Shown: positions 43,271-63,481 of the stretch, one piece after another
Layout of the letters: each line of letters starts with the position of its first letter
Numbering within the stretch: position 1 is the first letter of the stretch
NCBI GenBank assembly: GCA_010909165.1
Contig: MU008178.1
Location: forward strand, 322,369 to 386,368
Length of the DNA stretch: 64,000 nucleotides
Direction of reading: 5' to 3'
DNA from: Anthoceros angustus
Taxonomy: Eukaryota > Plantae > Anthocerotophyta
The notes under the pieces: model-generated
Seen by the model: only the letters and a program-made list of their open reading frames with translations
What the model was told of the DNA's origin: nothing
Databases searched by the model: none
Translations under genes and position numbers: made by a program

Positions 43271-44067
43271 TAATTATTTATTATCATCCCAAACTAATTA
43301 TCATACTAGGTTAGGGTTAGTGAAGCGTTATCAATTGTGAAACTCCCTACCGTCACGACTCTCCAGCACCACCTTTCTTGTACCACACACGTTTTTGCTC
43401 AATTTACTTCTCACACAACGCCATCTCTTTATGATTGCTTGATGCTTATACTTGCCATAACTGTTTAGACATGTTGACTTAGTTAGCTGACTAGCACTCA
43501 GACAAAGAAGAAGAGAGCTATGACCAGGTGCCAAGAGTTGTGAGGCACCGACGCACGTAGCTAGAGTATAGTGTACAGTTGAGGTGAGGCTAGACGAACT
43601 TAGGTGTATATTATTTGAAGGAATTCTAAATGTTCTGAAATGTATTCCTGCTCCTGCTATGAAGTTATCAAATTCCGTACGAGAACAAAGCTACTATGCT
43701 CTAGAATGGAGACATAAGAGATGGTAGGGTTGACAAAATCTGCTCTACATGTAGCATGCATTGTTCAACATTCATCGAACTATATACCATCGAACTATGA
43801 GATTCGATAATGATATCATATCTAGGATGTGTGTTACACGTGAGACCATCAAAGTTAATTTGAATGTGATAGGCCATTCCATCTCTCTCTATAATGAATT
43901 TCTCTATGAGGCATATAATTCTTTTGATGATAAAAAATAATTTTAAATCAATTAAAAAGCTCTTAAAGTCGGTTGCTTAAAGGAGTTACTAGCAAGTACC
44001 TAAAACTCACTCTAGCTAGAGAACAAGGGCGGCAAGAGCGGAGGACAGAAGCGGCAGGGCAGTGCGT

Positions 44068-44410
44068 GCGGTGGGGCGGTGCGTGGGCAGGGTGGTGCAT
44101 GCGGTGGGGCAGTGTGTGGCGGGCGTGTGGTGGGGGCGCGTGTGGTGGGGCAGTGCGTGTGGTGGGGCAGTTCGTGTGGTGGGGCGATGCGTGGGCAGGG
44201 TGGTGCATGCGGTGGGGCAATGCGTAGGCAAGGCGGTGCGTGCGGTGGGGCGGTGCGTAGGCAGGGTGGTGCATGCGGTGGGGTAGTGCGTAGGCAGGGC
44301 GGTGCGTGCGGTGGGGTAGTGCGTAGGCAGGGCGGTGCGTGCGGTGGGGCGGTGCGTGGGAAGGGTGGTGCATGTGGTGGGGCAATGCGTAAGCAGGGCG
44401 GTGTGTGCGG
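44068..44410 (+). repeat. G-rich 33-bp minisatellite (gcggtggggcggtgcgtaggcagggtggtgcat-like)
   Basis: Repeats visible directly; the 11-aa periodicity RQGGACGGAVR in ORF 44079..44510 confirms the 33-bp period. Confidence 0.9.
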
Positions 44411-44599: not shown

Positions 44600-46650
44600 C
44601 AGGCTATAAAAGCCCGGCCTGGGTCCATGTCTGCGGGCTCTTGAGAGGTGTTCCGGTTTCTGCCAAGGGGTTTAGATTTTTGCCGACGAGAGACTTTTAG
44701 TTCTCGGCGTGGGCTTTAGCAATTTTTGCCTCTTTGTGTTTGGTAGGGGTTCTTGTGGCCTGGTGTAGCTTTGGGCAGTCGAGGCGGTTTTCCGGTTCGG
44801 GTGTTGGCTTTGGCGGCATTCCTGGGTGAGTGGGGGTTTTTCCATGTGGCAGGACAGGTGCATTTTTACGACATCATTGAACAAGCTTGGTTTTTCCAAA
44901 GTGGCGCGGTAAGTCCATATCGTGGGGTGCAGTAGTGCATTTTGGCAAATTTCAGGTTGTTCTCTTTTTGGCCATAGGGTCCCTTACTTCTGCTCTTAAG
45001 AAAGACACTCCTTGTCCCGTGTGCGGGAAATTATTTAAGTCTTGGGGAGTCAAGAGCCACATCGGTCTAGTTCACAAAGACTTCGATCGGACTACTTGGG
45101 AGGCTTAGTTGAGGCTTGCTTCTTCTTCGAATGTTATCCCCCCAGCTTTGGATATCCATCCTGGGCCCTCTCCAGAGTCTTAGCAATGGTTGCGGGGGTG
45201 GGCTGATCATCTTTTGGCCTTGTATGAAGCGCGGTTCCCAGGACCACTCCTTTTTTTACGCCTCCCGTGGCACCTATAGGACGACATCCGCCTTGCTTAT
45301 TGCCTTCCCTTGGAGCGCCTCGCGTTGGATCCCAGAGATGATGCTGCTTGGGCTTTGTTCTTGTTTCTCCCTCGATGGTGCCTCCGTTGCTCTCGAGCCA
45401 GTTTTCCTGAGCATTGGGAGGTTGCCTCTTGTCTTCGCCGATTCTTGGCGGGGGATTGGGAAGTTCTGCAGGAGGAGGCTGGACGCACAGCAAGATCTAG
45501 GTTGGACTCTGCTAAGGATGGCCTTGTATGATCATACAAGGCGATCATACAAGGCCATCCTGTATGATCGTACAAGGCGATCATACAAGGCCATCTTGTA
45601 TGATCGTACACGTCGTTCTTCAAGTTGACGTCAAGAATGCCTTCAACACTATCTCTAGGGCGGCTATCTTCGACGAGCTCAAGGATGCGCGAGGACTGCT
45701 GGCTGGCCTTATCCCCTTTGTCCGCTCCTTTTATGGGTCTCCTTCCAACCTCTACTACCAACATGGACCCTCGGTGCAGCAGGTTTCTATTTTGGAATTG
45801 GAGACGGGCACAAGACAGGGTGACCCTGTGGGGGGAGTGCTTTTTTCTCTAGCGCACTTCAAGGCCCTGTCTTTAACTGCCTCCTCAGTGTGAGAATGAC
45901 TGTACCTGTCAGTGGCTGAAAATACTCATGTCATGGTGCCTAGGGACAAGGTTAATGGGGCTTTTGGTTTCTTCTCCTCGGAGCTCTCTTGGCTTGGCTT
46001 GAAGGTCAAGATCTTAAAGTGCAGGGTTTGGTCTTCGTCGGGTGTTTCGCCCTCTCTTCAGTACCCAGAAGGGGACATTGCTTCTCTGCAAGGGCTTCGT
46101 GTTCTTGGCGTCCTATTGGGGCCCCCGGTTTTCATTCAAGAATTCGTGGATGTGGCTTTGACAAAGGATTTGGCACACATTTATGACCTTTCTTAGCTAG
46201 GGGAGCCGTAGGTGACATTTGGGATCCTCTCTTTGTACTTGGCGCGGCGGCTTGGGTACCTTCTCCGTATGGTACCTCCTTCTCTAGCTTTCTTCTTCCA
46301 TATGGGAGCTTTCGACAAAAGGATTATGTAGGCTTTGGGTGACATCATTAGCCCTAGCACCTTCAAGTATGCCGCCAGGGATTTGGCGAAGCAGCAGGCT
46401 TCCCTTCCTGTCGCTTTTGGGGGCACTAGTCTGTTGGCTACGGAGGTCTCTACGCCGACGGTCTTCTTAGGGAGATGGGCCCTCTCTACCCCCATCCTGA
46501 CCTCTCGATTCTTAATTTGGGACTCCCACATTTTAGAGGCATTCATCTCGGGCGTGGAGGAGGGGGTTTTCCTCTCATAGGCATCCTTAAGGTTGGCTAG
46601 GGGACTTTTATCGCCTGAGACTGGGGTCACCTTGCCACATTTCTTCTCAC
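44600..46650 (+). mobile_element. Degenerate non-LTR retrotransposon (CRE/RLE-like), with C2H2 finger and RT, 3' end missing
   Basis: CPVCGKLFKSWGVKSHIGLVH (45013-45075); AWALFLFLPRWCLR; LQVDVKNAFNTISR; GTRQGDP; GLRVLGVLLG; QASLPVAFGG. No apurinic endonuclease domain seen. Confidence 0.75.
45521..45612. repeat. 36-bp tandem repeat (2.5 copies) starting with perfect 22-bp palindrome GCCTTGTATGATCATACAAGGC
   Basis: tgtatgatc starts at 45525, 45561 and 45597. Bases 45521-45542 equal their own reverse complement. Confidence 0.92.
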
Positions 46651-47829: not shown

Positions 47830-48230
47830 CGGCGTGTATGCTGGCGTGCTAGCGTCTTAGGCGTGCTAGCGATGCTAGCGTGCCAAGCGTGCTAGCGATG
47901 CTGGCGATGCTGGCGATGCTAGCGATGCCAGCGTGCTAAGCGTGCTGGCGATGCTAGGCGTGCTAGCGTGCTGCGAGGCGTGCTAGGCGTGCTGGCGTGC
48001 TGGCGATGCTGGCGTGCTAGGCGTGCTGGCGTGCTGGCGTGCTGGCGTGCATGCTGGCGTGCTAGGCGTGCCAGGCGGCGTGCTAGGCGTGCTGGCGTGC
48101 TGCGTGCTAGGCGTGCTGGCGATGCTGGCGTGCTAGGCGTGCTGGGGGCGTGCTGGCGATGCTGGCGTGCTAGGCGATGCTGGGCGACAGGCGTGCTAGG
48201 CGCTAGCGATGCTAGGCTATGCTGGCGATG
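47830..48230 (+). repeat. GGCGATGCTA/GGCGTGCTA minisatellite, left part
   Basis: 9-10 bp units read directly. Confidence 0.9.
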
Positions 48231-48411
48231 TGTGTAAAACAATTTGGACATCCGATAGCACAACATTTCCACATTCTCACACTTGTGCATGTGGTGACAC
48301 CACTAACTAACTACAAACATTTGCGAACGTGACATGTCATGATCAACACCAACTACGACCAATGCACATCCGAGAGCGATTAGAAAAGAAAACAATAATC
48401 CTAAATTCCCA
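48231..48411 (-). repeat. Partial LTR (U3-end fragment, equivalent to 48918-49103)
   Basis: ggacatc.gatagcacaacatttcc...gaaaagaaaacaataatcc..ctaaattccca matches the right part of the full LTR. Confidence 0.9.
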
Positions 48412-48417
48412 TCAAAA

Positions 48418-49103
48418 TGCCTCATTCAATCGGCGTCTATCACCGATCAACGCGGTGAGTTTGAGAGTTCACAGAGCGGACAGATATGCTGTGCCCAAAA
48501 CCAAGTGTCGACTCGGACATCCGTGATCGAAATTCCCAAGCAAGCTTTGGCATTCACTATAATTCTATGACGGGAGCTCGTCACTCCTCCGCTCAAGAGA
48601 CTCTCAAGACTATCCTAAGCCAAGCACGCTTGCCTCTTGTATCCGCGCCTAGTCGCTGCCGCCTCCGCCGCCTCCCGCCATGCATCGCCTTCCATCCTTT
48701 TCCATGATTGCGTTTCCCGGTCTTGTCACTCTCACCGCTCCCGCGAATCTCCTTGTTATGATCCAAAGAAATCAATGGTAATTCGTCACGACCTTCCCCG
48801 AAAACTAATGGCTAACAATACATGACATTTCTAGATGTCAAGATATTACCGATATCCTCTCTATGTACATGGACTTGCCTCAACCAATGATCCCGACACC
48901 GTGACTCGGCGCAATATCGTGCAAAACAGTGGACATCGGATAGCACAACATTTCCTGTTCTCACACTTGTGCATGTGGTGACACCACTAAGCGACTACAA
49001 ACATTTGCGACAGCGTGACATGTCATGATCAACGGCTCAACTACGACCAATGCACATCGGTGAGGCGATTAGAAAAGAAAACAATAATCCTGCTAAATTC
49101 CCA
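48418..49103 (-). repeat. Complete 3' LTR (~686 bp, TGGGAATT...GAGGCA in element orientation)
   Basis: TG/CA termini; immediately follows a G8 polypurine tract; central ~480 bp matches 56300-56770. Confidence 0.88.
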
Positions 49104-49113
49104 TCCCCCCCCA
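49104..49113 (-). other. Polypurine tract (GGGGGGGGA)
   Basis: The plus strand reads ca|tcccccccc directly beside the LTR terminus, about 40 bp after the stop of the PHD ORF. Confidence 0.85.
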
Positions 49114-49202
49114 GCTCGAAGCCAAGAGAAGGCCAACACGAGAATGCTGGTTCAACTAGAACCGCTAGGATCCCAAAGAGGTCTGGAGCTGGTCTCTCCA
49201 TC

Positions 49203-49337
49203 ACACTGAGCACAATACCACAATCCTTCAGGCACCTCTGTTAATGGCGGAACAAGGCAAAACAGATGAAAGCCTCCGTTACAACCATCACAAAGCAACA
49301 TGAGCTCAGGGTCATCCACCCGTTGACAAACTTGACA
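49203..49337 (-). CDS. PHD finger at integrase C-terminus
   Basis: CQVCQRVDDPELMLLCDGCNGGFHLFCLVPPLTEVPEGLWYCAQC is a complete C4HC3 pattern (ORF 49152..49484). Confidence 0.93.
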
Positions 49338-49499
49338 TGGATAATCACTAGGTGGCACCCAATTCATTTGAATCGTGGGATCCAGATTAGGTAGATGGCA
49401 AGGAGCACAATTGGTCATGTGGTCTTGTATAGTCCGCCATCTGCTCACGGAGCACCAACACAGCCTGGATCGAAGTTCCTTCACACGCAGAACAAGCGG

Positions 49500-50400
49500 T
49501 TAGTAGAAGGTTCTAATGTCGGCTTTGTCATGAAGATAAACATAATCGCCAACATGGAACTTCCTCATCTTAGGTCGGAAATGCCCACTCCTGGTGTAAG
49601 CATAACGTAAAGAGTCCCGATGTTGAGCAATTTTCAAATTCGCCATCGCCATAGGCATGGCTCTGCGAAACAACACTGCCCTGTCGCCAACAACCTTAGC
49701 CCAAGTGGCTGGATCATCCAGCTGGACCACCTGGTTCATTTCCTTGGCAATGGCAACCGGCGGAACCGGATCTCGTCCAAACAAGAGGAAATACGGTGAA
49801 AAGTGAGCTAGCGAAGCGTGTTTGCTCATACGGTACCCCATAGCCACATATGGCAAAGCCAAATCCCAGTCTGTCTTAGACATCTTGAGCAACAACTTAC
49901 GTAGCCCTTGTTTGATGGTCTGAACAAGTCGTTCAGCCAAACCGTCAGCTTGAGGATGGTCTCTGCTAGTGCGTCGGTGATCGATGAATGCGAAGTCTAA
50001 CAGATCTTGGAATTCTCCCCGGAATTCTGTGCCTTGATCCGTCAAACACTCTGCACAGCTACCAAAGCGACTGAGAACATGCTGCAAGAAGGCCTGAGAA
50101 GTGCTTCTGGATGACTTGTAGAGTGCCACAATTTCGGCCCACTTGGAAAAATGTTCCACCATCACCATCACATACGCGCGAGGCGTCTGGCAAATCTCCT
50201 ATAAGATCACAAGACCATCGTAAAACAAACCCATAATGGGTAATGGGCTGTGCTCACGGCTTGATGTTAAAAGAAGACTTCACCTTTGACCAGACCACCA
50301 CGCACTTGAGCATACATCCCAAACCAATGGAAATGAGGAGACAATAAACTATATGTTCGCTTGACCCCAAAGTGACCCATGTCGAATGAGCACGCATGAC
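49500..50400 (-). CDS. Integrase (zinc-binding + rve core)
   Basis: MGHFGVKRTYSLL..HFHW.GMY near 50320-50380; VEHFSKW, LTDQGTEF, HPQADGLAERLVQTIK in ORF 49500..50171. Confidence 0.93.
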
Positions 50401-50729
50401 CAAAGCTACTCGGTCATGTGCGAGCACCAGTGAGCCCGAGACAAGTGCGGATCAAATAGCCATCTTTCCAACGATCGAGCCTCAGATCCGATCTCGTTGA
50501 AGTCTGCAAGTGCAATCAGGAAACAATCCATTTGAAGAAACCGCACAGTATGATCATCTTCCCATATGTCGCGCATGTGCCCGAAATCAGCAGTCGGTTC
50601 TCCATGTCCCACACATAGATTCCGCAAACATGTTGCTGCTGTGTAAGAAACTTGACCCGTGATCTCGTCATGGTCCTGCCTAGCACACGTCTCATCCTCA
50701 TCACAGAGTCGGGGATGTCGAGAAAGCAC

Positions 50730-51065
50730 ATCCGCATTCTGGTGTGTGATGCCAGGGCGATGAACGACTTGGAATTCATAATCCTGCAATGTCATTGCCC
50801 ACCTTGCGACCTTGCCACTGAGCTTAGTATTCGTCATAAGCCAACGTAAAGGCTGATGGTCAGTCACCAAAGTAAATGGCCGACCATACAGATAAGGTCT
50901 GAAATGGCAAACAGCCCAGACCGCGGCCAAACACTCCCCTTCATATAGCTAGGATAATTGCTCTCAGCCCTGTTGTTGCTACGTGATGCATAAGCGATAA
51001 CACGCTCATGTCCTTCTTCGTCCAGTTGTGCAAGCACGGCTCCAATACCTAACTGACTCCAATCC
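50730..51065 (-). CDS. RNase H (Ty3/gypsy type)
   Basis: LHTDWSQLGIGAVLAQ; VIAYASRS; AAVWAVCHFRPYLYGRPFTLVTDHQPLRWL; HRPG..HQNADVLSR. Confidence 0.92.
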
Positions 51066-52117
51066 GTATGAAGCACAAATGGCTTCTCGAATCGGCGGGC
51101 CATCACCACATCACTGTTCTTCAACAATTCAAATGCTGTTGGCGTCCTCTCCAATCCCAAATCACGCTTGCAGCAGTTGTTAAGTGGCTTAGCAAGGCTG
51201 CTAAAATCTTGAATGTAAATCCGGTAGTAGTTGCACAATCCCAGATAGGAGCACAATTCCGACACACCAGACGGAACAGGTACCTCTAACACAGCTTGAA
51301 CCTTTGCAGTGTGTGGCATGATACCATTAGGCACAATCCTATGTCCCAAATAGGCGACAGTATCCATGCCCAGCTCACACTTAGCTGGATGACATTTGAG
51401 TCCTACCTTGCGGAGCCTGCAGAATAGATCCTCTAAATGCCTCAAATGAGCCTCAAAATCCTTGCTGTGCACAAGCACATCATCAATATAGCAAAGCGAG
51501 ATGGCTCGGACAATACCTTGTCCATGATACTATGTACAGTGCATTTCAAACCCAAACGGCATAAACAACCATTCCCATAGTAGCGATGAAATGCTGTCTT
51601 TTTATGTCTTCTTCAACCATTGGCACTGGTTGAATCCTTGCAGTCGAGAACAGAAGAATGCTCGTCCGATGCTATCAAATAGCTCCTCTGGTATGGGCAT
51701 CGGATAACGATCTTGAGCCGTCACAGCATTGATCGGTCGATAATCACCACACATGCGTTTCTCTGTCCATAAACCCTGACTGTCCTTCTTAGGAGGAAGA
51801 ACAATTGCAGCTGCATAGTCAGAAGTGGATGGTCGAATCAATCCTGCCTCATACAGTTCCTGACAGCGCTTATCGACTATTTCCCATTCTGCAGGACTGA
51901 GCCTGTAACGACGTCGGTAGATGGGCTCATTAGTTGTCAGCTGCACCCCGAACTTCATAACGTTGCAAGTACCAAGGTCCTTCATCGAAAACGCAAAACA
52001 ATCTTGATATGTTATCAGCAGCTGAAGCAATCGCCGTCGCTGATCATCTGTCAACTGTGGACCCATCTTCCACTGGAAATCAGCCACTTTTAGCCTCGAT
52101 TGCTTCCGATAACGCAA
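51066..52117 (-). CDS. Reverse transcriptase (Ty3/gypsy type)
   Basis: IRPSTSDYAA..V...KKD; KRMCGDYRPIN..T..DRYPMP; CYIDDVLVHS (~51479-51493); AYLGHRI; SYLGLCNYYR. Confidence 0.95.
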
Positions 52118-52314
52118 CGAGTCGCCAGATCATCATTGAAGCTGAAACGATGATCTCTAAAATGCATACTCCCCTTCCGGTGAAAAGGCGATTCGAAGCT
52201 CGAAAAGGCAGATGAACAGCATCTGGATGACACAAGCGCGATCGCCGACAAAGCCGCAAAACCAGGACCAAAGAAAAGTTGGAAAGCCAACAGAGTCTTG
52301 TGACGAGCTCACAA

Positions 52315-53200
52315 GATGTAAATCCATGGCACGACCCAGAGCAGCACATCACTGAGCAATAGAAATGCCAGGAGCGGCAGTATCGTGAGTCGCAAACCCC
52401 ATAATGCGTTCCCGCTCTTCAGCAGTGGGTTCCTCCCAACGCCGAGTCTCTGAATGCAGCAATAATCCCGGGCCTTCTCCACGATACGCATAAGACCCTG
52501 GGAAACTAACAAGTGTAGGCAAGGTACGTCGCGGATAACCCACCTCATTGGTAGCAAACCATGGGGCTTTCTCCGGGGCTGTAATTGGTCGAGGAGAGTG
52601 ATAAACTTCGAGCACATCCTGTAATTGACGTTCAGGACGAATAGTATGATGTAAAGACAATACAAGGACTATCAACGGAGCCCAGTTTGTCCAAAAACTG
52701 CGAAGACGATGAGCATAACTGCCTGTCTGCACGGCATCAAAAACCAGAGGCGGGCCCAGAACATGCTGCACCAAATTGGCGTCATGGCGCACACACAGCC
52801 GAGAATCTAGATGTGCAGGAGTGTTTTCCAGCATGTAAACCACCGACGGATTATCTGCTGAAACTCATGCGCGACGAGAGGCAAGAACAACCCGGATCGC
52901 GAATCCGAGGCCATCCCCAAATCCAAGAGAACCCCTGGCATTCCCAACCAGCAACCACAAGGTCCACACGTCCTAAAGCTTGAACATGGGATGATTGAAT
53001 CAGCAAGATATCTTGTGGCAGGGTGGTAAAAGCACAATTGAAAGCGGATAAATTGGGGAAAACGGATGCACAAGCTGCAAACGATGTGCGCAATTGAAAC
53101 CACTAAGCGATTATCACAATAGTAATAACTATGAATACGCAATCCCGCACGTAAGCCTCCAAGCAAATACCTCCAAACAACTCCACCAATACATGCCCCT
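52315..53200 (-). CDS. C5 cytosine DNA methyltransferase domain embedded in pol between protease and RT
   Basis: Motifs in canonical order: I LVELFGGI (53166-53189), II RIHSYYYCD, IV VDLVVAGWECQGFS (52927-52967), VI YMLENTP (52820-52828), VIII QTGSYAHRLR, IX EERERIMGF, X LGRAMDL (~52319-52339). Frameshifts and one TGA (52349-52351) interrupt the frame. Confidence 0.88.
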
Positions 53201-53559
53201 CGGCAGGCCACGAAATAGTCGTCGTCACGAGTGAAAGCAACTCTGTGCAATCGCCCAAATAGGCCGAGGCCGATCCAGAACCGCGTAAACAAATTCGACA
53301 TGATGTTGAGCCTCAACCGACAACGAGGGTGACCTGACAATCATCTCATCAACAGCAGCGGCACAAGCCTCCACCACTGAGTCAGGGTGCGTCACTTCAT
53401 CGACAGTCTCATCAACCTCTGAAAACAACCATTGCTCATGCCGATCATCCTTGACCAACTGAGGAATACACTGTATCATACAGACATGGCGGCCGGCCAA
53501 CGACACTTCCACATCGTCATTGCAGTGATGCAAATCAAGTGGAATATAGGCCAATCTCT

Positions 53560-53900
53560 TGCCTCCTTGCCCAATGTCGTCAGAAAAGCTTGCTCGGTCC
53601 AATTATCAATGCTGACCCCAGGTGGGAACAAAAACTCCTGACCCAAAAGTACATCATAATTGGTAGCAGTAGAAACCAGACAACGTAACTCGAGAGTCAC
53701 GCGATCGGCGTCAGTCGAGAGAAATAGAATCGGAAACACCGTCTCACCCTTGACCGCTCCACGCTCCGCTTTGTCACGGATGTTCCAGGGAGAGTTGCGT
53801 AATGCCGATCCCATCAACTGCAATCGAGTGGCCGTAGTCGACCAATAATAAGCGGCGAGCACCGATGTCGAACAACACCATACGAGGTGCAACACCATTG
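53560..53900 (-). CDS. Aspartic protease
   Basis: VLFDIGA (D-T/I-G, ~53858-53878) and TNYDVLLGQEFL..PGVSIDNWTE. Confidence 0.8.
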
Positions 53901-54419
53901 ATCGTCACATGACCAGCGGTATTGTTCACCAATGCATGATTGACCCGAACTTGCGGCGATTTGTTGGTTGCACCAACGGATTGCCTTGAGTGGCAAGGGC
54001 CAAGTGTGAAACCATCACCGGTTTTCCAGCAGCGTGGCTCAATCCAATCCAGCTCACGGTAGCTAGAGCATCACTAGTCTTGCCTCACTCGGCTCTGTCT
54101 AACTCGCGGCGTAACATGCACAGAACCGGTGATGTAAAAGGGAAGCAACCCGTGCAGTCCCTATTCCCACCTCCTCAAGAGAAAATAAAGGTACATGCAC
54201 CAGTTTGTGTAGCAATTCCGACTCCTCCCACGTCATGGAAGACAAACGAATAGGTTCACCTCCTTGATCTCTGGCTGACTCACGTCCAGATATGGCTGGC
54301 AAATGGTCTGAACCACGCAATGGCGGAACAGACGCCAAAGGTACAGTGGCAAATGACTTAGGCATGACTGCCCTAGCTTGCTGCAACCTGATACTTTGCC
54401 GTGGGAGCCGAACCTCCGC

Positions 54420-56140
54420 CGTCATGCTGGCAGCTCCTGACCTAACCAAGAGCAAGGTAAGTCTTCTAGCATACTAGATGTGTGCACAACGTGCTCTCGC
54501 TCCAGAATTTTCTTCGTCTCAGCCATCTTGTGAGCCATGCAAACATGGTAAGGATCCCCATAATCTTCTCCCACACGTACATGCTCTGTGAGAGTCACAA
54601 ACCATAACTCCTGCAAGTTTATCTTTAGACACCACGGAAGCTCCTCCAGCAGCTTGAGCCAAACTAGCGAAGTGTACCCAAGCTGCGTTGTAAGAGCAGC
54701 AAGTAGCTTCAGCATGGGTTACCTTACTAGCATTGGCCACGATCTTCGCTTAAACTTCTCCCGCTTTAATTTGCTCTTGGAAACAGTCCCAGATGTCCGC
54801 CATTATAGTAGGAGACCCAATGGCAATCGGATGCTGAAATTTCACCATCTCCACCCGCCTTTTGCACTCGACGCAGAAACTGAAATGATCGTCACAACAT
54901 GACGCCTTGTGACAAGCAGGTGTGCATAATGACTCCATCACGCATTTGCATGCGAGACAAATGTTCGGTGCTTCCACATCCGTTACACAACGGTGTGAAA
55001 GTAGCAGCAGCTCGCCATCGGGTTTAACCCGTAGGCTTTACCACTCCACGCCGACTCGCCGAGTTACTTTTGCCAAAGAACATGTGCCGATAATGCGAGT
55101 ACGCTTCGAGTGTAAGCATAAGCCGAGAATGCGCCTTTCGCCCGCTTCAAACACCGCTCAAGAGTGTATTGATCTCCGTACTTGTCAACAAGTGAAGTGA
55201 ACAATTGGAAATGAAATAATGGCTGGCTCCAAAGCACTAAGAAACTTTGAGCGCCTCGATCCAACATGCACTTCCTTAGCTTCAGACGACGGAAAGCCAT
55301 TTGAACAGCTCCTTTCTTATGTAAACGCAGATAACTCTAATCTTCTGGGGTCTTGAAAGGAAAAGCCTTCTCAAGAATGATAAAGAATTCCTCCACCGGA
55401 TTAGCGTAAGTTGGAACCTCAATGTATTCTTCTATACCTCGCAGCACGCTCTTGGGAGGTCATCGATCACCCCGGAGGTTTCACATTAGGTGACACAGCG
55501 CAGATGGCGGCTTGATGAGCCGACACCGATGCATGCAAATTATTATACGCCACCTGCAAGGCTTGCTGATAAGCAGGATTAGGAGTCACAGATGTAGCCA
55601 GCAATGCAGCTGCATGTGTCTCATATAGATCGAGAGCTCATCTGCCATGTAACCAGGCAGCTGCTCAAACATGTAACGATCTGTAAAAGCTATGCCATGC
55701 TTGAATTTCACACGGCTAGTAAGGAAGTTGAAATAGAGCTTGAAATCACGCAAAGTCTGCGTGCCAGGTCTACCAGAAAACTTATCTGATTTGGCTGGAA
55801 GAGAACCAGTATCAGCCATGATTTCAGAGTCACTCGATTCTGCAGAAGAACCGAGCTCACAAGTCGTGATCTCACCAATGGTGACCAGCCAACATCTGGC
55901 CGTTGAAGATGTCTCTTCAGAACAAGCGCATCTCCCGTCGCAGGTCTTCCACGGATGCTCACTCGTAATCGATCGATTTTGCCGTCCGGCTCTTTTGCGG
56001 TGCGAGCCACATGCTTGAGCACCCTCCTTGAACGTAATTGGTGGTGCCTCACCACTCAGCTCATCCGCGCATCCGTCATGCAAAGAACAATGATCGAAAC
56101 CGATTTCATCCAACAACTTGATTACCACATTCTGTTTCAC
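54420..56140 (-). CDS. gag-like region (fragmented)
   Basis: Lies between the 5' LTR and protease; KFSGRPGTQTLRDFK...FEQLPGY is capsid-like. Assigned largely by position. Confidence 0.5.
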
Positions 56141-56283
56141 GACATCGAATCCGGACCCTAACTCAAGGCTTTCTCAAGAACCGTAACAAGGTCCTCGGCT
56201 TGACATCAAGGTGATGACATGCAACTAGGAACATAGCTCGAACCCTAGTTCTTTCTCAAGCACGACATCACACGCCGTCGAGC

Positions 56284-56295
56284 AGTCTTGAGAGT
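56284..56295 (-). promoter_or_regulatory. Putative self-priming primer binding site (ACTCTCAAGACT in element sense)
   Basis: Starts 4 nt downstream of the 5' LTR end and is the exact reverse complement of LTR bases 56475-56486. No TGG-initiated tRNA PBS is present. Confidence 0.75.
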
Positions 56296-56299
56296 AAAA

Positions 56300-56782
56300 T
56301 GCCTCATTCAAGCCTATCAGCCGATCAAACGCGGTGAGTTTGAGAGTTCACAATGAGCGACATAGTGCCGCAACCCAAAACCAAGTGTCGACTCGGACAT
56401 CCGCATCGAAATTCCCAAGCAAGCTTTCGGCATTCACTACATAGCCGCCGAGCTCGCCACCTCCGGCTCAAGAGACTCTCAAGACTATCCTAAGCCAAGC
56501 ACGCTTGCCTCTTGTATCCGCGCCTAGTCGCCTTCGCTCGCCGCCCTCCCGCCATGCATCGCCTTCCATCCTTTTCCATGATTGCGTTTCCGGTCTTGTC
56601 ACTCTCACCAGCTCCTGAATCTCCTTGTTATGATCCAAAGAAATCAATCGGTAATTCACCACGACCTTCCCGAAAACTAATGGCTAACAATACATGACAT
56701 TTCTAGATGTCAAGATATTACCATATCCTCTCTCTATGTACATGGACTTGCCTCAACCAATGATCCCGATAATGCGGGACTC
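56300..56782 (-). repeat. 5' LTR, lacking its outer ~200 bp of U3
   Basis: tgcctcattcaa...caaccaatgatcccga matches 48418-~48900. Confidence 0.9.
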
Positions 56783-56792: not shown

Positions 56793-57170
56793 GGCGATGC
56801 TAGGCGATGCTAGGCGATGCCAGGCGATGCCAGGCGATGCCAGGCGATGCCAGGCGATGCTAGGCGTGCTAGGCGATGCTAGGCGATGCCAGGCGATGCC
56901 AGGTGCCACGCCAGGCCCACGCCAGGCGATGCTAAGCGTGCTAGGCGATGCCAGGCGATGCTAGGCGATGCCAGGCTTACGCCAGGCGATGCCAGGCTTA
57001 CGCCAGGCCCACGCCAGGCGATGCTGGCGATGCCAGGCTTAGGCCACGCCAGGCCCACGCCAGGCGATGCTAGGCGATGCTAAGCGTGCTAGGCGATGCC
57101 AGGCGATGCTAGGCGTGCTAGGCGTGCTAGGCGATGCTAGGCGATGCTAGGCGATGCTGGGCGACGCCTA
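56793..57170 (+). repeat. GGCGATGCTA/GGCGATGCCA minisatellite, right part (same orientation as 47830-48230)
   Basis: Shares variant units gctaagcgtgct and gctgggcgac with the left block. Confidence 0.9.
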
Positions 57171-57649: not shown

Positions 57650-60340
57650 TAACCTTGATTAAGGGTTTGATCTAGCCACTAACCGCCTGGAGTGCATGCC
57701 CGACACACTCGATCCGGACGGAGCTACCAACCAAAGAAGTCCATCGAGCGAATTCAAGTCCCGACCAAGAGAGAAGTGCGAACACCTCGATTTTGGTACC
57801 AAAGGACACGGAGGAACCCAACACCCAATCAACAATCTTTGAAGGATCCGTGAGTGGCAACACACAAGACACGTTAGCTGCCGGACAACTGCCAATGAGG
57901 AGGACTTGTCTTGGAGTCGCCAAGATGGGAGGAGACAAGGATCGAATGGAGTTGTTCATGACGGCACCTTGCACCGGAGGACTTCATCGAGAAGTACGGT
58001 GCGTGTGGAGATGGAATTGAAGACCGGATACACGAAGCGATACTTCCATCCAAATGCAAGTACTTGGGGATGAAGCATTGGCGCTATCGCGAGCACAAGG
58101 CGAGGTTGTTGAGCACATCCGGAGGACCGGAGTAGCAAGCTCGAGGAACCAAGAAAGCAAGGCACCAAGTGGGCACGATCCCATCAAGAGATGTTGACAT
58201 CTTCCTACCGGAGTTTCGCAAGCACGGATGAGAAGATCTCGCACACTTCAAGATGAAGTCAGCGAGACCAAGATGGCTTATCAAGAATCGCTGGTACGTG
58301 ACACCAAGATCATGAGTGACCGATCGGGCGCAGAGAAGTACTTGCAGCATTGCCATATGCGCATATGAAGGTGCAACAAGCGTGCAAAGGGCAACACTAC
58401 ACCCTCAAGGAAGTGTACGAGATGGTGACAAGATAGGGCCCGGCCGACACTTTCTCTCGTCTTGCAAGTGATTACTCCAAAGACAAGTAGGAGTGGTGGA
58501 CGACATGACCGACGCGGAGGTCAGAGTGGAGGAGCTCGGCGAGACAAGCCAGCCCACACAGCCCAAGTGACGAGCCCCTGCGTGAGGTGCCGAGGGACGG
58601 ACCATTCCCTCATGAGTGCGAGCATGCATCTGGAGGAGTCAAGGGTGAGGAGCCATGCCCTAGTGGGAGGTACGGCACAATGAAGCGCATGTTGGGAGAA
58701 GCATCCGAATTGCGCTCACGGGTTATCGAAAGCAACCCCGCCAATGCATCTGCCAACCTCATCCACAAAATCAAAAAGAGCAAAGGCGCCTGGAGGAGGC
58801 ACCGCAAGTCCCGTGGACAAAAGAAACGGGAAGCATCAAAGAAGACGATGGACATTTGGCACGCCGCAAAGGAGAAGGAGGGGAGAGGAGGCGAAGATCA
58901 AGGAGAGCAGCTCATCATCGAGGACGAAGAAGATGAGCACAAGCTTGGATACATGGCGATCGTGACCGATCCAAGGGCAGGGAAGAAACCTCCGCGACGA
59001 GAGAAGATAGCTCGAGGAAGAAGAGGATGTCTTGACACCGCAGGGAAGACACGGAAGGAAGCTTCGGATCCTCTTCCCGAACCTATGCCAAGATGCCAAA
59101 GTCGTTTGAGCCATTGCCAACAGGAGCAACTGGGAGCAACATCAAAGTCCAGAGTGGGCGATGTGGAGAAACCCATGCGCAGATTGTTGACGGAGACGAT
59201 GGCACAAAAGCTTCTGGAGATGCCATGTTTCAGCCTACAAGACATGGGGTTGAGCGTGAAGGAAGTCAGGGGTTTGACTCGGATGTTGACAACCCTTGAA
59301 GACGAAGCAAGTGTCCAAGATTTGCCACAGCAGGTAGCAATGATGTCATTGCGACCTCAACCAAGCATCTCGCGTGGAGAAGGAATGTCGCACGAGTGGG
59401 GTGGCTTTGGTCAACAATCGGGAGAGGCACATTGAAATCAATGGATTCGCACCAAGGAGGGTGTTGATTGACACCGGAGCACAGGGTGATCGTTGGAAGA
59501 AGAGTGAAGGAAGCTGGGTCTCCACCAAGAAAGGTTGAAGGAAACCAAGTGGAAGATCCGCATCACTGGGACCACGGAGCATGTGTTGGGGTGACAAGGT
59601 ACAAGCTGAAGGTTTCATTCAAACCAAGAACAGCAGACTTCACCTTTGTCGAGGTACACTGCTTGGTCACTGATGCGCACATTTGATGTCTTGCTGGGAG
59701 CGGACGCTTTGTACAAACCTGGAGTCATGGTGGATTTGTGGACGGAGATAGTCTACTATCGACCAGGCTGGAGAAGCTGGAGCAAAACCGATGAACGGAT
59801 TGCCCGCATCCCTCTGCATGCATGGCAAGGATCATGAGAACCTCATTGCCACCGCTACCCAAGTTTGGCCAGAGGAAGGACACGCCATACGTGCTTGAAC
59901 CTCTTGGCGTGTGTCTAACAACCGCACGACTGATGGAGGATTTGACGAGGAGGAAGACAAGCTAGGGTTGCAACCACCCTCGGAGGAGGTTCTTCAAGTC
60001 ACCGGACGGGTGCTGCAATGAGCCGTGCAAAAGGCTGTGGAGGATGGTGCAAGAGGACCCGGTGTCCTATGAGCGGGAGCTACGTAAGTTCTTGCCTAGG
60101 GTTGAGCTTTGTTTGACCTAAACACCGGTCATCACATGGCGACCTCGGGAAGGCGGCATAGTGCTCGTGGAACTCTTTGGAGGCATCAAGTCTTGAAGCA
60201 ATGCTGAAGTGTGGCATCAAAGTGCGAAGATACGTGGATTGTGACCCGGATCCGAAAGCAAAGATTGTGCCGTCAGGCGGAAGGACTTGATGGGGAGTAC
60301 TAACCTCGGCGTGCCCTACTAGAAAGGGCAGCCTATGTTA
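57650..60340 (+). mobile_element. Degenerate second Ty3/gypsy element: gag-CCHC knuckle-protease-DNMT N-terminus
   Basis: CVRCRGTDH.PHEC (58579-58619, frameshifted); VLIDTGAQ (59461-59484); FDVLLGADALYKPGVMVDLWTE; VLVELFGGI (60161-60189) then LEAMLKCGIKVRRYVDCD. Confidence 0.8.
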
Positions 60341-60746: not shown

Positions 60747-61195
60747 AAGGAGGAGGAGGAGGAGGGAGGAGGGGAGAGGAGGGAGGAAGAGGAGAGGAGG
60801 AGGAAGGGGAGAGGCAGGAAAGGGGAGAGGAGGAGGAGAGGAGGGAGGAGAGGAGGAGGAGGAGGAGAGGAGGAGGAGGCAATGAGAAAGGGGAGGGATC
60901 AGAGGTGGGGAGGAGGAGGAGGAGGGAGGAGGAGGAGGAGGAGGAGGAGGAGGAGGAGGAGGAGGAGGAGGAGGAGGAGGAGGAGAGAGGCAAGAGGAAA
61001 GGGGAGAGGGATCGATATAGAGGAGGAGGAGGAGAGGAAGGAGGAAAGGAGGAGGAGGAGGAGGAGGAGGAGGGAGGAGGAAGGAGGAGGGAGAGGGAGG
61101 AGGAGGAGGAGGAAGGAGGAGGGAGGAAGGAGGGAGAGGAAGAAGGAGGAGATGGGAAGAAGGAGGAGGAGGGAGGAAAGGAAGAGGAGGAGGCC
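60747..61195 (+). repeat. (GGA)n-rich polypurine low-complexity tract
   Basis: About 450 bp, almost exclusively G/A on the plus strand. Confidence 0.95.
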
Positions 61196-62329
61196 CGTTC
61201 CATGCTGTGATTTCAAGTAGAGACCCAATCCATGCTTGGATTTCAGTGAGACCCATTCCATGCTATGATTTCCGTCAATTTTTCGATTGATGCGTAACCA
61301 CCGTGACATGATGTTGGTGAAGGGATGGTGGCGGGCGGGATCACGTGTACGTATAAGCGGATCTTGTACTTGTAGAGCATTGTCAGGCCAAGACCTGTTC
61401 CAATCATGATTTCCTCTCAAATTTTCAGCGAACTAGCTAGTGCGATTTGATGTTAGAGAAGGCGATAGTAGCATGGCGGGTGTCTCGTGTACATGTACAA
61501 CGCAAGTAGTTGCAAGGTCGTGCCAAGACCCATTCCATCTTTATTTCTTATCTCAAATTTTCAGTGCGTGCAGGACTATGATGTGAAGTTAGGGAAGGCG
61601 ATGGAAGAAGGCGGAGGGAGGATAGGAGGTGGAGCAACGCAGCCATGGTCGAGGCAAGGGCAAAAGGCGCGTGGACATGAGGCGTGTCTAGGGGAGAGAA
61701 GGAGGGAGGACTTGGGCCAAACAACCCAGCGCAAACATGGGTCCGCGTAGCACAAACTCGTAGGCACAAAAGGCCGAATGCTCAAGGACAAACTAGTAAA
61801 CGTATCGTGGACGTGTACAAAGTATGTACGTTATCCGTGTACGATATGCTTATTTTTATATAAAATAGAATATGACCATATATCACGGAAATTACCATAT
61901 AGTATATGTTACCATGAACAATACGTGTATTTTACAAAGAATGTATTCATACATGTATTTTTATATATGTGTATTCATACGAGTATCGGTGGGAACTACT
62001 AAGTAAAACTAGGTATTCCATAGGGTAATAGTAGTAAAAGAGGAAGGTAGATGGGGAGGAGGTTCGGTACCAAGCACAGAAAAGAGACGATGTAACACTT
62101 TGGTTGTTGCAATTATGTTGAAATTTTGAGAGGGACACAAACCACCTCTCACTACATTGCAACATAATTGCAACAAGACATATATGAGTAAGGTGGAGGT
62201 TGGTTTCCAAACCTAAGCATCAAGGGGTCCCAAAAGTGTAACAAGACCCCAAGATTTTAACATAATTGCAACAAAGGGGTCCAAATCTTAACATAAAATG
62301 TAACATGACGCCCTTTCTAGTAGGTGGGA

Positions 62330-62625
62330 GTGGGTGGGTTACCGAGGAGGCGGTCGATGGATGCTCGCATGATAGGGTTGTCCCATTTGAGTTGTCTTGG
62401 GCAACCGTGGACCTTGTCATCGCGGGTTGGGAGTGTCGAGGACTATCCTCTGCAGGCAAGGGTCAAGGTCAAGGATCCACGACAACATTGTTCTATGACG
62501 ATGAGGATCTTGCGCTTGAAAAGGGCAAGAAAGGCCTTGTGGATACATGTTGGAGAATGTGCCAGCATGCCCAAGAAATTTTTAATGGTGTGCAAGTCCT
62601 ACTAGAAAGGCAGCCTATATTCTGA
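62330..62625 (+). pseudogene. Third retroelement-type DNMT fragment (motifs IV and VI)
   Basis: VDLVIAGWECRGLSSAGKGQG (62407 onward) and GYMLENVP (62541-62564, different frame). Confidence 0.8.
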
Positions 62626-63454
62626 TCGTTGTTGCAATTTTATGTTACTTCAAATTGCAACATGCTATAGGCTTGGTATTAAGTTTGACACTATTCCCTT
62701 CTCATTTTGTCACCATCTTAACACGAACTCTCTCTCTCATCACCTCACCCTCCTAAGTACACCTCTCTCTCACAAGCATTGTTTATGATTTCAAACATAC
62801 TATATGAAACTATATTCACAGTCCTTTGTTACAATTTCATGTAACACTTTCCATTTGGAACACTCATTAAGTTAGTTGGCTTGGTGTTAAGTTTGTGATA
62901 CTCTTCTCTACCTTCTCTCACCATCTTAACAACATGCAAGTGGTCTGTTGACTTTACACCTCACCATTAAGAGCTTAGCATTAAGTTTGTTGGCTTGGTG
63001 TTAAGTTTGTGATTTTCTTCTCCACCTTCCCTCACCTTCTTAACAACCTGCCTTTGGTCTCTCCTTTCACCTTACACTCCTAGTTAATGCTCCAGTATGA
63101 CACCCATTTTATAATTTTTCCCTCTTTGTGTTGCAACATGACTGTGACAATGAGCTCCCCTCTCACACTACTATTTTTATTCTTCCCCTCTTGCTTTTCC
63201 TACATGACAGTAACCAGGAACTCTATCTCTCTCCCTTTGGTTGTCATTCTCTTTCCATTTTGCCTCCTTTGCATAGCTATGCATTTATAATCTACCTTCC
63301 CTCTTCAATGCACCCTTGTGTCCACATCTGGTTTTGTTTTAAGCTCCATACAATTGAAAACTCTTGTTTTTGATTATGTATAGTAGGATTCTAGATTATT
63401 TTATATGTCTATCTATATATACACGGTTTGCGGGCGACTTATGTGTATATTCCT

Positions 63455-63481
63455 ATATATATATATATATATATATATATN
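63455..63481. repeat. (TA)n microsatellite ending at scaffold gap (N at 63481)
   Basis: tatatatata... followed by n. Confidence 0.95.

What the first reader, a model, noticed from the sequence alone, without database searches (positions are those of the whole stretch)
52315..53200. Ty3/gypsy retrotransposon carrying its own cytosine DNA methyltransferase inside pol
Seen: six or more C5-MTase motifs in canonical order (LVELFGGI, GWECQGFS, ENT, SYAHRLR, ERERIMGF, LGRAMDL) on the same strand as, and between, the protease and RT. Established (from memory): de Mendoza et al. 2018 (Nat Commun) reported DNMT capture by retrotransposons in dinoflagellates and charophytes, with de novo CG methylation activity. 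Inference: the host here has intron-containing neprosin genes and looks like a land plant. If so, this may be a poorly described land-plant lineage of retroelements that methylate their own cDNA or target. The single stop in motif IX-X is TGA where Arg (CGA) fits, which is itself a 5mC-deamination signature.
Basis: partly seen in the sequence, partly recalled or inferred. Interest (0 to 1): 0.92.

Follow-up and report, generated by a model that had tools for sequence, protein, structure and literature searches.

The report
Dead methylase-carrying Gypsy retrotransposon copy
This is a broken, old copy of a jumping gene that carries its own DNMT3-type DNA-methylating enzyme; papers describe the family only from the alga Klebsormidium, but it also occurs in other green algae and the liverwort Marchantia.

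Summary
All six motifs lie on the minus strand at 52315-53200, in canonical order, between a protease remnant and the RT. The 164-aa C-terminal piece finds 597 protein clusters (best E 5e-33).

The domain is DNMT3-type by family profile (DNMT3A 5e-23, M.HhaI 1e-10) and by fold (top 50 PDB matches are all DNMT3A/B/C).

The element (about 48231-56781, minus strand) belongs to the streptophyte Gypsy-DNMT3 family described as KnitGypsy-Dnmt3 (de Mendoza 2018). It shares:
- the order PR-DNMT-RT-RNaseH-INT-PHD;
- the 'A-coding-B-A-B' repeat layout;
- one integrase clade (support 99) with elements of Klebsormidium, Closterium and Marchantia polymorpha.

This copy is dead. The DNMT has at least four frameshifts and one stop. 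The rest of pol has about 11 further stops. The repeats differ by 9-12%.

I could not identify the host: it is plant-like, and earlier scan notes call it hornwort-like.

This scan already reported the same family on other DNA of this genome (s1-267830, s1-300096). Verdict: a new, decayed member of a known kind, of moderate interest.

The parts
56296..56781 (-). Repeat A1, the 5' terminal repeat of the element. It ends ...GAGGCATTTT next to the internal region.
   Evidence: 89.7% identical to A2 over 497 columns; K2P 0.125; alignment; boundaries.
55586..56140 (-). 184-aa ORF in the gag position. The assignment rests on position only.
   Evidence: ORF list. No Pfam hit. No tblastn match to the gag of relatives.
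53476..53932 (-). Aspartic protease remnant, with several stops and frame changes.
   Evidence: tblastn to the protease region of P0024 (536-582) and P0086 (1092-1126). P0024 carries PF13650/PF13975. Six stops when read in one frame.
52315..53260 (-). DNMT3-type C5 cytosine methyltransferase domain. Motifs I-X are in order. There are at least four frameshifts in the N-terminal half and one TGA at 52349-52351. Motif IV reads GWECQ, not PCQ.
   Evidence: Family profile against PDB: DNMT3A 5e-23. Fold of a relative: DNMT3A/B/C, TM 0.80.
50864..52117 (-). Reverse transcriptase (YIDD present). It is in the same frame as the DNMT C-half and is broken by stops at 51604 and 51532, with local loss of motif sequence.
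   Evidence: Pfam RVT_1, RT_RNaseH_2 and RT_RNaseH on 50864-51478. Colinear tblastn to P0269 and P0134. Stops.
50406..50951 (-). RNase H domain, reached by a frame change near 50945.
   Evidence: Pfam RT_RNaseH 3.9e-16; tblastn.
49500..50279 (-). DDE integrase. The zinc-finger part is broken by stops at 50408-50201. The core is an open 223-aa ORF at 49500-50171.
   Evidence: tblastn to the integrases of P0134 and P0269. 61% identity to the Marchantia element's integrase. Pfam itself gave no rve hit on the fragment.
49203..49337 (-). PHD finger (C4HC3) fused after the integrase, preceded by a conserved NCAPCH..D motif.
   Evidence: Pfam PHD 1.1e-13. The same module sits after the integrase in Klebsormidium L002 5602-5838 and Marchantia L003 17997-18233, and in chlorophyte relatives.
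49106..49117 (-). Polypurine-tract-like GAGCTGGGGGGG, immediately upstream of repeat B1.
   Evidence: The same AGCTGGGGGGG-type run precedes B1 in Klebsormidium. A weaker version (AGCTAGGGGTG) does so in Marchantia.
48915..49105 (-). Repeat B1.
   Evidence: 88.4% identical to B2; K2P 0.089; alignment.
48414..48906 (-). Repeat A2. It is separated from B1 by about 8 nt (48907-48914) and abuts B2 directly.
48231..48413 (-). Repeat B2, the 3' end of the element. It ends ...ACACA against the satellite.
56793..57164 (.). Roughly 10-bp satellite (GGCGATGCTA) flanking the 5' end of the element.
   Evidence: TRF. Similar to the 47839-48230 array.
47839..48230 (.). The same satellite family flanking the 3' end, so the element sits inside a satellite array.
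   Evidence: TRF; blastn.

Best explanation
The stretch is the DNMT3-type methyltransferase domain of a decayed copy of a streptophyte 'Gypsy-DNMT3' retrotransposon, the family first described as KnitGypsy-Dnmt3 in Klebsormidium nitens.

The element lies on the minus strand at about 48231-56781. Its layout is repeat A, gag?, protease, DNMT3-like domain, RT, RNase H, DDE integrase, PHD finger, a G-run, then repeats B, A, B.

Shown here:
- homology;
- domain order;
- the repeat layout;
- membership of one integrase clade with the Klebsormidium, Closterium and Marchantia elements;
- the fact that this copy cannot encode any working protein.

Inferred for intact family members:
- The pol polyprotein delivers a SAM-dependent C5 methyltransferase into the particle or pre-integration complex, where it most likely methylates the element's own newly made cDNA. 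This is the proposal of de Mendoza 2018. The catalytic Cys, ENV and RxR residues are invariant across the family.
- The C-terminal PHD finger steers the integrase by reading histone H3 tails.
- The unit A...B is inserted as one linear DNA with TG...CA ends. It keeps an internal end-to-end junction (...GACA GC TGTC..., a perfect palindrome in Klebsormidium and Marchantia). That is what opening a two-LTR circle at a palindromic site inside one LTR would give.

In this window none of this is active. It is a fossil inside a satellite array.
For: - Motifs and frames.
- phmmer with the 164-aa piece: 597 hits, best 5e-33, many inside 1000-3400-aa polyproteins.
- Two architectures among the relatives. 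PR-DNMT-RT occurs in Closterium spp., Klebsormidium nitens (KFL_000540020, KFL_013780020) and Marchantia polymorpha (MARPO_0020s0163).
- DNMT-RT-RNaseH-INT is colinear with a single 2138-aa ORF.
- Family profile against PDB: DNMT3A/3B/3C 5e-23 to 2e-19, DRM2 1e-9, M.HhaI 1e-10. PF00145 hits 8 of 9 intact members.
- AlphaFold model with pLDDT 93.5; all top 50 PDB folds are DNMT3A/B/C.
- 19 invariant columns across 53 diverse domains, including the motif IV Cys, ENV and the RxR Arg.
- A-coding-B-A-B layout in the window, in Klebsormidium and in Marchantia with PR-DNMT-RT-RH-INT-PHD between the repeats. The paper describes this layout for KnitGypsy-Dnmt3.
- Integrase tree: all PR-DNMT-RT elements form one clade (SH-aLRT 99). 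The window is nearest Marchantia at 62% identity.
- PHD finger: Pfam 1e-13, also present in Klebsormidium and Marchantia.
- Decay: stops and frameshifts; repeat divergence K2P 0.125 and 0.089.
Against: - No piece of this copy reaches Pfam PF00145. The DNMT call rests on relatives.
- Motif IV has Glu in place of the near-universal Pro before the catalytic Cys.
- The only activity test of a family member (the Klebsormidium domain in yeast) detected no methylation. The authors called this inconclusive.
- The DNMT-only tree does not place the window copy with support.
- The window copy's internal B-A junction and termini are too decayed to show the palindrome or a target-site duplication.
- Host identity is unproven.
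- cDNA self-methylation, PHD-guided targeting and the circle-opening route are inferences. They were not shown here or in the literature I could read.
Confidence: 0.88

Rival explanations
1. An independent, land-plant-specific capture of a DNMT by a Gypsy element, making a new lineage unrelated to the charophyte one. This is the stronger reading of the first reader's proposal.
For: DNMT-only identity to Klebsormidium and Marchantia is just 38-40%. The DNMT tree does not resolve the window copy's position.
Against: It shares the position in pol, the A-coding-B-A-B layout, the G-run before B1, the PHD tail with its NCAPCH motif, and the family-specific DNMT signatures (W before the catalytic Cys, AHRLR.FWTN, ERERAMGF, LGRAMD) with the algal elements. 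The integrase clade has support 99.
Confidence: 0.04
2. The DNMT-like stretch is a host DNMT3 pseudogene, or a separate insertion, that merely lies next to or inside a Gypsy element.
For: The copy is too broken to show one continuous ORF across PR-DNMT-RT.
Against: The DNMT C-half and the RT are in one frame and colinear with single-ORF polyproteins. The same junctions recur in at least four organisms. No repeats flank the DNMT segment.
Confidence: 0.02
3. In this family the domain is no longer a DNA C5-methyltransferase. For example, it might serve as a DNA- or SAM-binding module, or act on RNA. On this reading 'self-methylation of cDNA' is wrong even for intact members.
For: Most members, including this copy, have Glu for the conserved Pro of the Pro-Cys catalytic dipeptide: 110 WECQ against 41 WPCQ. 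The state needs at least 8 changes on the tree. The Klebsormidium domain gave no methylation in yeast.
Against: The catalytic Cys, ENV Glu/Asn, RxR Arg and the motif I glycines are invariant or nearly so across 53 divergent domains. The paper reports Ka/Ks<0.2 for the Klebsormidium copies. The predicted fold overlays DNMT3A bound to DNA. The yeast assay also failed for human DNMT3B.
Confidence: 0.2
4. This copy is still functional, or is expressed as a source of DNMT activity for the host.
For: None found. No sequencing run was listed for the stretch, so expression could not be looked at.
Against: There are at least four frameshifts and a stop in the DNMT, about 11 more stops in RT-RH-INT, a degraded protease and 9-12% repeat divergence.
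Confidence: 0.01

Closest known systems
KnitGypsy-Dnmt3 of Klebsormidium nitens (de Mendoza et al. 2018, Nat Commun 9:1341; called 'streptophyte Gypsy-DNMT3' in bioRxiv 10.64898/2026.05.21.726589)
   Same: It has a DNMT3-type domain inside pol upstream of RT, and Gypsy RT-RNaseH-integrase. The A-coding-B-A-B repeats, the G-run before B1 and a PHD finger after the integrase are shared. I found the PHD finger in the K. nitens DNA at L002 5602-5838. Both fall in one integrase clade.
   Different: The window copy is dead and old. Its motif IV is ECQ, where K. nitens has PCQ. DNMT identity is only about 38%. The host is plant-like and not Klebsormidium: no close protein match exists in public collections.
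Marchantia polymorpha element at KZ772692.1:1719915-1731614 (includes MARPO_0020s0163)
   Same: It is the closest integrase (61-62% identity). It has the same PR-DNMT-RT-RH-INT-PHD order and the same A-coding-B-A-B repeats.
   Different: The Marchantia repeats are 98% identical, so that copy is young. It has clean TGTC...GACA termini, a GACA-GC-TGTC internal junction and a candidate 4-bp duplication (ATTT). Its motif IV is PCQ. It carries a 1-kb internal tandem duplication and is itself frameshifted in the RT. I found no paper describing it.
Chlorophyte RT-RNaseH-DNMT-INT-PHD Gypsy polyproteins (Haematococcus lacustris, Monoraphidium neglectum MNEG_11595, Chromochloris zofingiensis, and many metagenome contigs)
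   Same: They share a homologous DNMT domain (34-46% identity, same signatures including GWECQ) and a homologous integrase-PHD tail with the NCAPCH motif.
   Different: The DNMT sits between RNase H and integrase instead of between protease and RT.
SymbioDIRS-Dnmt3 of Symbiodinium (de Mendoza 2018)
   Same: It has a DNMT3-type domain in pol and A-coding-B-A-B repeats. It is the only retroelement DNMT with shown de novo CG methylation.
   Different: It has a DIRS backbone with a tyrosine recombinase, not a DDE integrase. The paper judges it an independent acquisition.
Canonical DNMT3A/3B (animals) and plant DNMT3/DRM
   Same: The fold and motif order match, and these are the best profile and fold matches.
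   Different: Identity is about 20%. There are no PWWP or ADD domains. The domain is embedded in a retroelement polyprotein, and Glu replaces Pro before the catalytic Cys in most members.

Membership tests
C5 cytosine DNA methyltransferase, DNMT3 class | Motifs I, IV, VI, VIII, IX and X in canonical (non-permuted) order | tested here: met
   Searches give coordinates for each motif.
C5 cytosine DNA methyltransferase, DNMT3 class | Significant match to Pfam PF00145 | tested here: not met
   No hit for any piece of this copy, even at E 10. Eight of 9 intact relatives pass the gathering score, so the failure reflects fragmentation and divergence.
C5 cytosine DNA methyltransferase, DNMT3 class | Pro-Cys catalytic dipeptide in motif IV | tested here: not met
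   The Cys is present but is preceded by Glu (GWECQ). This is the majority state in the family, while Klebsormidium and Marchantia keep PCQ.
C5 cytosine DNA methyltransferase, DNMT3 class | Closer to DNMT3 than to other C5-MTase classes | tested here: met
   Family profile: DNMT3A 5e-23 against DRM2 1e-9, M.HhaI 1e-10 and DNMT2 1e-5. The fold search top 50 are all DNMT3A/B/C. No tree with canonical DNMT1/3/5/6 was built, because I had no reference sequences.
C5 cytosine DNA methyltransferase, DNMT3 class | Methyltransferase activity | not testable with these tools
   This copy is broken. The literature test of the Klebsormidium domain was negative and called inconclusive.
Streptophyte Gypsy-DNMT3 (KnitGypsy-Dnmt3-like) | DNMT3-type domain inside the pol ORF of a Gypsy element, upstream of RT | tested here: met
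   (one frame, colinear with a single-ORF relative). Klebsormidium locus L002 has the DNMT gene followed by RT-RH-INT.
Streptophyte Gypsy-DNMT3 (KnitGypsy-Dnmt3-like) | A-coding-B-A-B arrangement of repeats | tested here: met
   Window. Klebsormidium B-A-B. Marchantia, full layout. Paper.
Streptophyte Gypsy-DNMT3 (KnitGypsy-Dnmt3-like) | Sequence kinship with the Klebsormidium elements | tested here: met
   P0115 (KFL_000540020) hit at 2.8e-19. The integrase clade has SH-aLRT 99. The DNMT-only tree is unresolved.
Streptophyte Gypsy-DNMT3 (KnitGypsy-Dnmt3-like) | Streptophyte host | tested here: inconclusive
   Neprosin_AP genes lie in the window. The organism was not identified.
Ty3/Gypsy LTR retrotransposons (Metaviridae) | PR-RT-RNaseH-INT order with a DDE integrase | tested here: met
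   Relatives carry RVT_1, RT_RNaseH, Integrase_H2C2 and rve.
Ty3/Gypsy LTR retrotransposons (Metaviridae) | Two identical-at-insertion LTRs flanking the internal region | tested here: not met
   The 5' end has only A. The 3' end has B-A-B.
DIRS-like retroelements | Split direct repeats A-coding-B-A-B | tested here: met
   Paper definition.
DIRS-like retroelements | Tyrosine recombinase instead of a DDE integrase | tested here: not met
   An integrase of the rve type is present. No recombinase ORF was seen.

The most novel reading that the evidence does not exclude
The copy is one fossil of a single, ancient Gypsy lineage spread across the green lineage. It carries both a DNMT3-type 'writer' and a PHD 'reader'.

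- The lineage is abundant in chlorophytes (RT-RH-DNMT-INT-PHD). It is present with the DNMT moved ahead of RT in streptophyte algae and bryophytes.
- On this reading the DNMT capture predates land plants, and perhaps the chlorophyte-streptophyte split, rather than arising 'in the K. nitens lineage'.
- Most members have swapped the catalytic Pro-Cys for Glu-Cys.
- The streptophyte branch integrates through a palindromic end-to-end junction kept inside its LTR, which gives the DIRS-like A-coding-B-A-B layout with a DDE integrase.
- Young copies in Marchantia would make self-methylation by a retroelement testable in a genetic model land plant.
Probability: 0.3. Interest if true: 0.7.

Novelty: new member of a known kind. 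Interest (0 to 1): 0.4.

Why it matters
Cytosine methylation is the host's main weapon against transposons, so a transposon that carries its own methyltransferase is a paradox. Papers describe it only in dinoflagellates and one charophyte alga.

This window adds one more dead copy in a plant-like genome. That alone changes little. The searches around it show three things:
- The family reaches Closterium and the liverwort Marchantia polymorpha.
- It shares its DNMT and PHD modules with a very large set of chlorophyte elements.
- It has a conserved, unusual end structure.

If active copies exist in a tractable land plant, two questions become experimentally approachable: does a retroelement methylate its own cDNA, and what does it gain from doing so?

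Tried and rejected
- Pfam on the separate DNMT, integrase, RT-start and protease pieces gave nothing, even at E 10. One call failed because a reference contained stops.
- phmmer of the 164-aa piece against PDB gave nothing. Only the family profile worked.
- The look-up of sequencing runs listed no run, so neither expression nor assembly errors could be checked.
- Host identification failed by five routes:
  - The Copia ORF 41667-42707 finds only about 40% identical proteins from many plants and metagenomes.
  - Exact look-ups of two window ORFs are not on record.
  - Rfam found no RNA gene in the window.
  - The ESM-Atlas look-up of a neprosin ORF gave only sub-threshold, unrelated hits.
  - The three cluster look-ups gave no names for the closest DNMT hits.
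- The DNMT C-half tree is too weakly resolved to place the window copy. I rely on the integrase tree instead.
- The CpG-deamination idea was tested by CpG observed/expected ratio and by stop-codon types. It is not supported.
- A target-site duplication for the window copy could not be defined, because both flanks are the same satellite and the termini are decayed.
- Literature searches found no description of Gypsy-DNMT3 in land plants, nor of the chlorophyte RT-RH-DNMT-INT-PHD elements. The library lacks most subscription journals, so this is absence in what was searched only.
Full report
**Observation.**
- LVELFGGI, 53166-53189
- GWECQGFS, 52926-52949
- (ML)ENT, 52820-52834
- SYAHRLRSFWTN, 52685-52720
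- ERERIMGF, 52394-52417
- LGRAMDL, 52319-52339

The C-terminal 164 aa (52349-52843) form one open frame. A phmmer scan of this piece against 1.84 billion representatives gave 597 hits at E<=1e-3 and 319 at E<=1e-10. The best was 5.1e-33 at 43-53% identity. This is not chance.

The motif I block, the following GLRAGL...YYYCDN block, the motif III-IV block, the DSRSGLF block and the motif VI block lie in alternating frames. That means at least four frameshifts. In addition there is the TGA at 52349-52351. Pfam does not recognise any piece of this copy.

**What the domain is.**
An alignment of nine intact domains from the hits (A2) was used as a profile against PDB sequences:
- DNMT3A/3B/3C: 5e-23 to 2e-19
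- DRM2: about 1e-9
- M.HhaI: about 1e-10
- DNMT2: about 1e-5

Eight of the nine members pass Pfam PF00145. An AlphaFold model of a Closterium domain, built on a 53-sequence alignment, reached pLDDT 93.5. Its 50 best PDB fold matches are all DNMT3A, 3B or 3C, with E down to 2e-18 and TM 0.80 by target. Across the 53 divergent domains, the motif IV Cys, the Glu-Asn of ENV and an Arg of RxR are invariant. So the domain is a DNMT3-type C5 methyltransferase.

One feature is unusual. The residue before the catalytic Cys is Glu (GWECQ) in this copy and in most relatives: 110 WECQ against 41 WPCQ. The Klebsormidium and Marchantia proteins keep Pro. On the tree of the C-terminal half, the Pro/Glu state needs at least eight changes. 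That tree is weakly resolved, so the count is soft.

**The element around it.**
On the same strand lie the following parts:
- a protease remnant (53476-53932), matching the protease region of Closterium and metagenome relatives;
- the RT (52117-50864, with YIDD present);
- RNase H (50951-50406);
- a DDE integrase (50279-49500);
- a PHD finger (49337-49203; Pfam 1.1e-13).

The DNMT C-half and the RT are in one frame from 52852 to 50940. The whole DNMT-RT-RNaseH-INT stretch is colinear with a 2138-aa single ORF on a metagenome scaffold, which carries PF00145, RVT_1, RT_RNaseH, Integrase_H2C2 and rve. The DNMT is therefore part of pol, not a nested insertion. No repeats flank it.

The copy is dead. 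In-frame stops lie at:
- 52351, 52159, 52135, 52132, 51604 and 51532 in the DNMT-RT frame;
- 50951, 50408, 50351, 50282, 50201 and 49502 in the RNaseH-INT frame.

The protease is also badly broken.

**Repeats.**
A self-comparison and alignments show, in element orientation:
- A1 (56781-56296), then the coding region;
- a G-run, GAGCTGGGGGGG (49117-49106);
- B1 (49105-48915), then about 8 nt;
- A2 (48906-48414), directly abutting B2 (48413-48231).

A1 and A2 differ by K2P 0.125. B1 and B2 differ by 0.089. This is the 'A-coding region-B-A-B' arrangement. De Mendoza et al. 2018 describe it for DIRS elements and state that it is also the repeat structure of KnitGypsy-Dnmt3, whose domains are otherwise Gypsy-like. 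Both ends of the window copy abut the same roughly 10-bp satellite (47839-48230 and 56793-57164). The element therefore sits in a satellite array, and no target-site duplication can be read.

**Relatives.**
I sorted 264 retrieved proteins by the order of matches to the window's own pieces. This gave two architectures.

The first is RT-RNaseH-DNMT-INT-PHD, with more than 110 complete cases. Named examples come from the chlorophytes Haematococcus lacustris, Monoraphidium neglectum and Chromochloris zofingiensis.

The second is PR-DNMT-RT-RNaseH-INT, as in the window. Named examples are:
- several Closterium strains;
- Klebsormidium nitens KFL_000540020 and KFL_013780020;
- Marchantia polymorpha MARPO_0020s0163.

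In the Klebsormidium locus, DNMT and RT-RH-INT genes are followed by B (161 bp), A (385 bp), B. The run GCTGGGGGGG lies before B1. The B1-A2 junction reads CACGACA-GC-TGTCACG. A PHD finger that the gene models missed lies at 5602-5838.

The Marchantia locus (KZ772692.1) has this layout:
- A1, 7222-7517;
- PR, DNMT, RT, RH, INT and PHD, from 12398 to 18233;
- B1, 18401-18512;
- the dinucleotide GC;
- A2, 18515-18810;
- B2, 18810-18921.

Both repeat pairs are 98% identical. A starts TGTCATG and B ends CACGACA, so the unit has TG...CA ends. The internal junction GACA-GC-TGTC is a perfect palindrome. The flanks read ATTT on both sides, a candidate 4-bp duplication. That Marchantia copy is young but not intact: the RT is frameshifted, the PHD has a stop, and 1 kb of the DNMT region is tandemly duplicated.

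An integrase tree puts all PR-DNMT-RT elements (Klebsormidium, Marchantia, window, Closterium and the metagenome element) in one clade with SH-aLRT 99. The window is nearest Marchantia at 62% identity. The DNMT C-half tree is unresolved for the window copy.

The integrase-PHD linker motif (NCAPCH..D) is shared with the chlorophyte elements. So are the DNMT signatures. On the DNMT tree the two architectures need only two changes. I read this as one backbone in which the DNMT changed place. This is an inference, because no Gypsy elements without a DNMT were included.

**How it most likely works.**
Shown here:
- homology;
- domain order;
- repeat layout;
- conserved catalytic residues in the family;
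- the death of this copy.

From the literature:
- The Klebsormidium copies are under purifying selection (Ka/Ks<0.2).
- They are themselves CHG/CHH-methylated.
- Only the Symbiodinium DIRS-Dnmt3 domains were shown to methylate CG de novo in yeast.
- The Klebsormidium Gypsy domain gave nothing. The authors call that inconclusive, because human DNMT3B also failed.

Inferred:
- In intact members the DNMT is released from pol and methylates the element's own cDNA. This is the paper's proposal.
- The PHD finger guides the integrase through histone H3 tails.
- The plus-strand primer site (the G-run) sits before B, and the internal region begins right after A. Reverse transcription should therefore give an LTR of the form B-GC-A.
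- Joining two such ends gives the A|B junction seen at A2|B2. Opening that circle at the palindromic GACA-GC-TGTC site of one LTR gives exactly A-coding-B-GC-A-B with TG...CA ends.
- This fits the three loci, but nobody has shown it. A DIRS-like bridging mechanism would give the same layout.

- The TGA at 52349-52351 does fall on a conserved Arg column, and the next residue, Cys, falls on another.
- However, the element's CpG observed/expected ratio is 0.84, against 0.76 in the neighbouring gene array. Most other in-frame stops are TAG or TAA. Only 11 of 34 transitions between A1 and A2 are at CpG sites. There is no special deamination signature.
- Activity of the charophyte family was not demonstrated.

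**Host.**
The window holds a tandem array of intron-split genes with Neprosin_AP domains and a Copia element. No tool named the organism. Earlier reports of this scan call the genome hornwort-like. I did not verify that.

**Prior knowledge and novelty.**
The kind is known: de Mendoza 2018, and a 2026 preprint that speaks of 'streptophytes (Gypsy-DNMT3)'. The papers I could search contain no description of it in land plants, nor of the chlorophyte DNMT-PHD Gypsy elements. One survey states that no DNMT3 was found in green-algal transcriptomes.

This scan had already reported decayed copies of the same family elsewhere in this genome, and its presence in Marchantia (s1-267830, s1-300096). My searches confirm the Marchantia presence independently. 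The one copy I examined there is not intact.

The present window therefore adds a further fossil copy, plus a second, more fragmentary one on the plus strand (PR-like at 59667-59864, motif III-IV at 62290-62502).

**Verdict.**
This is a new, decayed member of a known kind, of moderate interest.

**Working limits.**
I made no repaired or joined translation of the element, and no consensus of copies. All searches used the separate open pieces by reference.

Noticed in passing
window 59667-59864 (+) and 62290-62502 (+): A second, much more decayed PR-DNMT-type remnant lies on the opposite strand. It has a protease-like stretch and a DNMT motif III-IV stretch reading AGWECRGLS, separated by low-complexity DNA.
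   Followed up: partly
window 1-41000: A tandem array of units about 4.2 kb long, with GC content alternating 0.36/0.43. Each unit holds intron-split ORFs with the Neprosin activation-peptide domain (PF14365, up to 1.5e-15).
   Followed up: partly
window 41667-42707 (+): A 346-aa open frame of a Ty1/Copia pol (RVT_2 relatives). It is only about 40% identical to anything in the public protein collection.
   Followed up: partly
window 45528-46196 (+): RT-like ORF fragments (weak RVT_1, 2.7e-4), probably from a non-LTR element. They lie next to a 33-bp tandem repeat at 44053-44410.
   Followed up: no
window 47839-48230 and 56793-57164: The same 9-10-bp satellite (GGCGATGCTA-like) borders both ends of the DNMT-Gypsy. 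The element therefore inserted into a satellite array, or carries it at its ends.
   Followed up: partly
public proteins P0013, P0016, P0032, P0214, P0229 and more than 100 others: A very large set of chlorophyte and metagenomic Gypsy polyproteins has the order RT-RNaseH-DNMT-INT-PHD. Their DNMT and PHD modules are homologous to the window's. I found no paper describing them.
   Followed up: partly
motif IV of the family (window 52926-52949; proteins): The Pro of the catalytic Pro-Cys dipeptide is Glu in most members (110 WECQ, 41 WPCQ, and rarer A/S/D/L/Q). The state needs at least 8 changes on the tree.
   Followed up: partly
L003 (Marchantia polymorpha KZ772692.1) 7222-18921: A young copy (repeats 98% identical) with TGTC...GACA termini, a palindromic internal junction GACA-GC-TGTC and candidate 4-bp duplication ATTT. 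It has a 1-kb tandem duplication (13269-14269 / 14269-15269) that repeats the DNMT C-half. About 4.9 kb lie between A1 and the protease, including a called gene with an S-methyl_trans hit.
   Followed up: partly
L001 (metagenome scaffold ERZ19026216 scaffold_1611): An 8043-bp unit carrying the 2138-aa PR-DNMT-RT-RH-INT ORF is repeated head to tail at 100% identity over 6.7 kb. This is either a true tandem or an assembled circular or multi-copy form. No PHD finger follows its integrase.
   Followed up: no
window 60748-61193 and about 63440-63480: A long imperfect AGG/CCT microsatellite (148 units). Further on, a TA run sits next to an ambiguous base (N) in the assembly.
   Followed up: no
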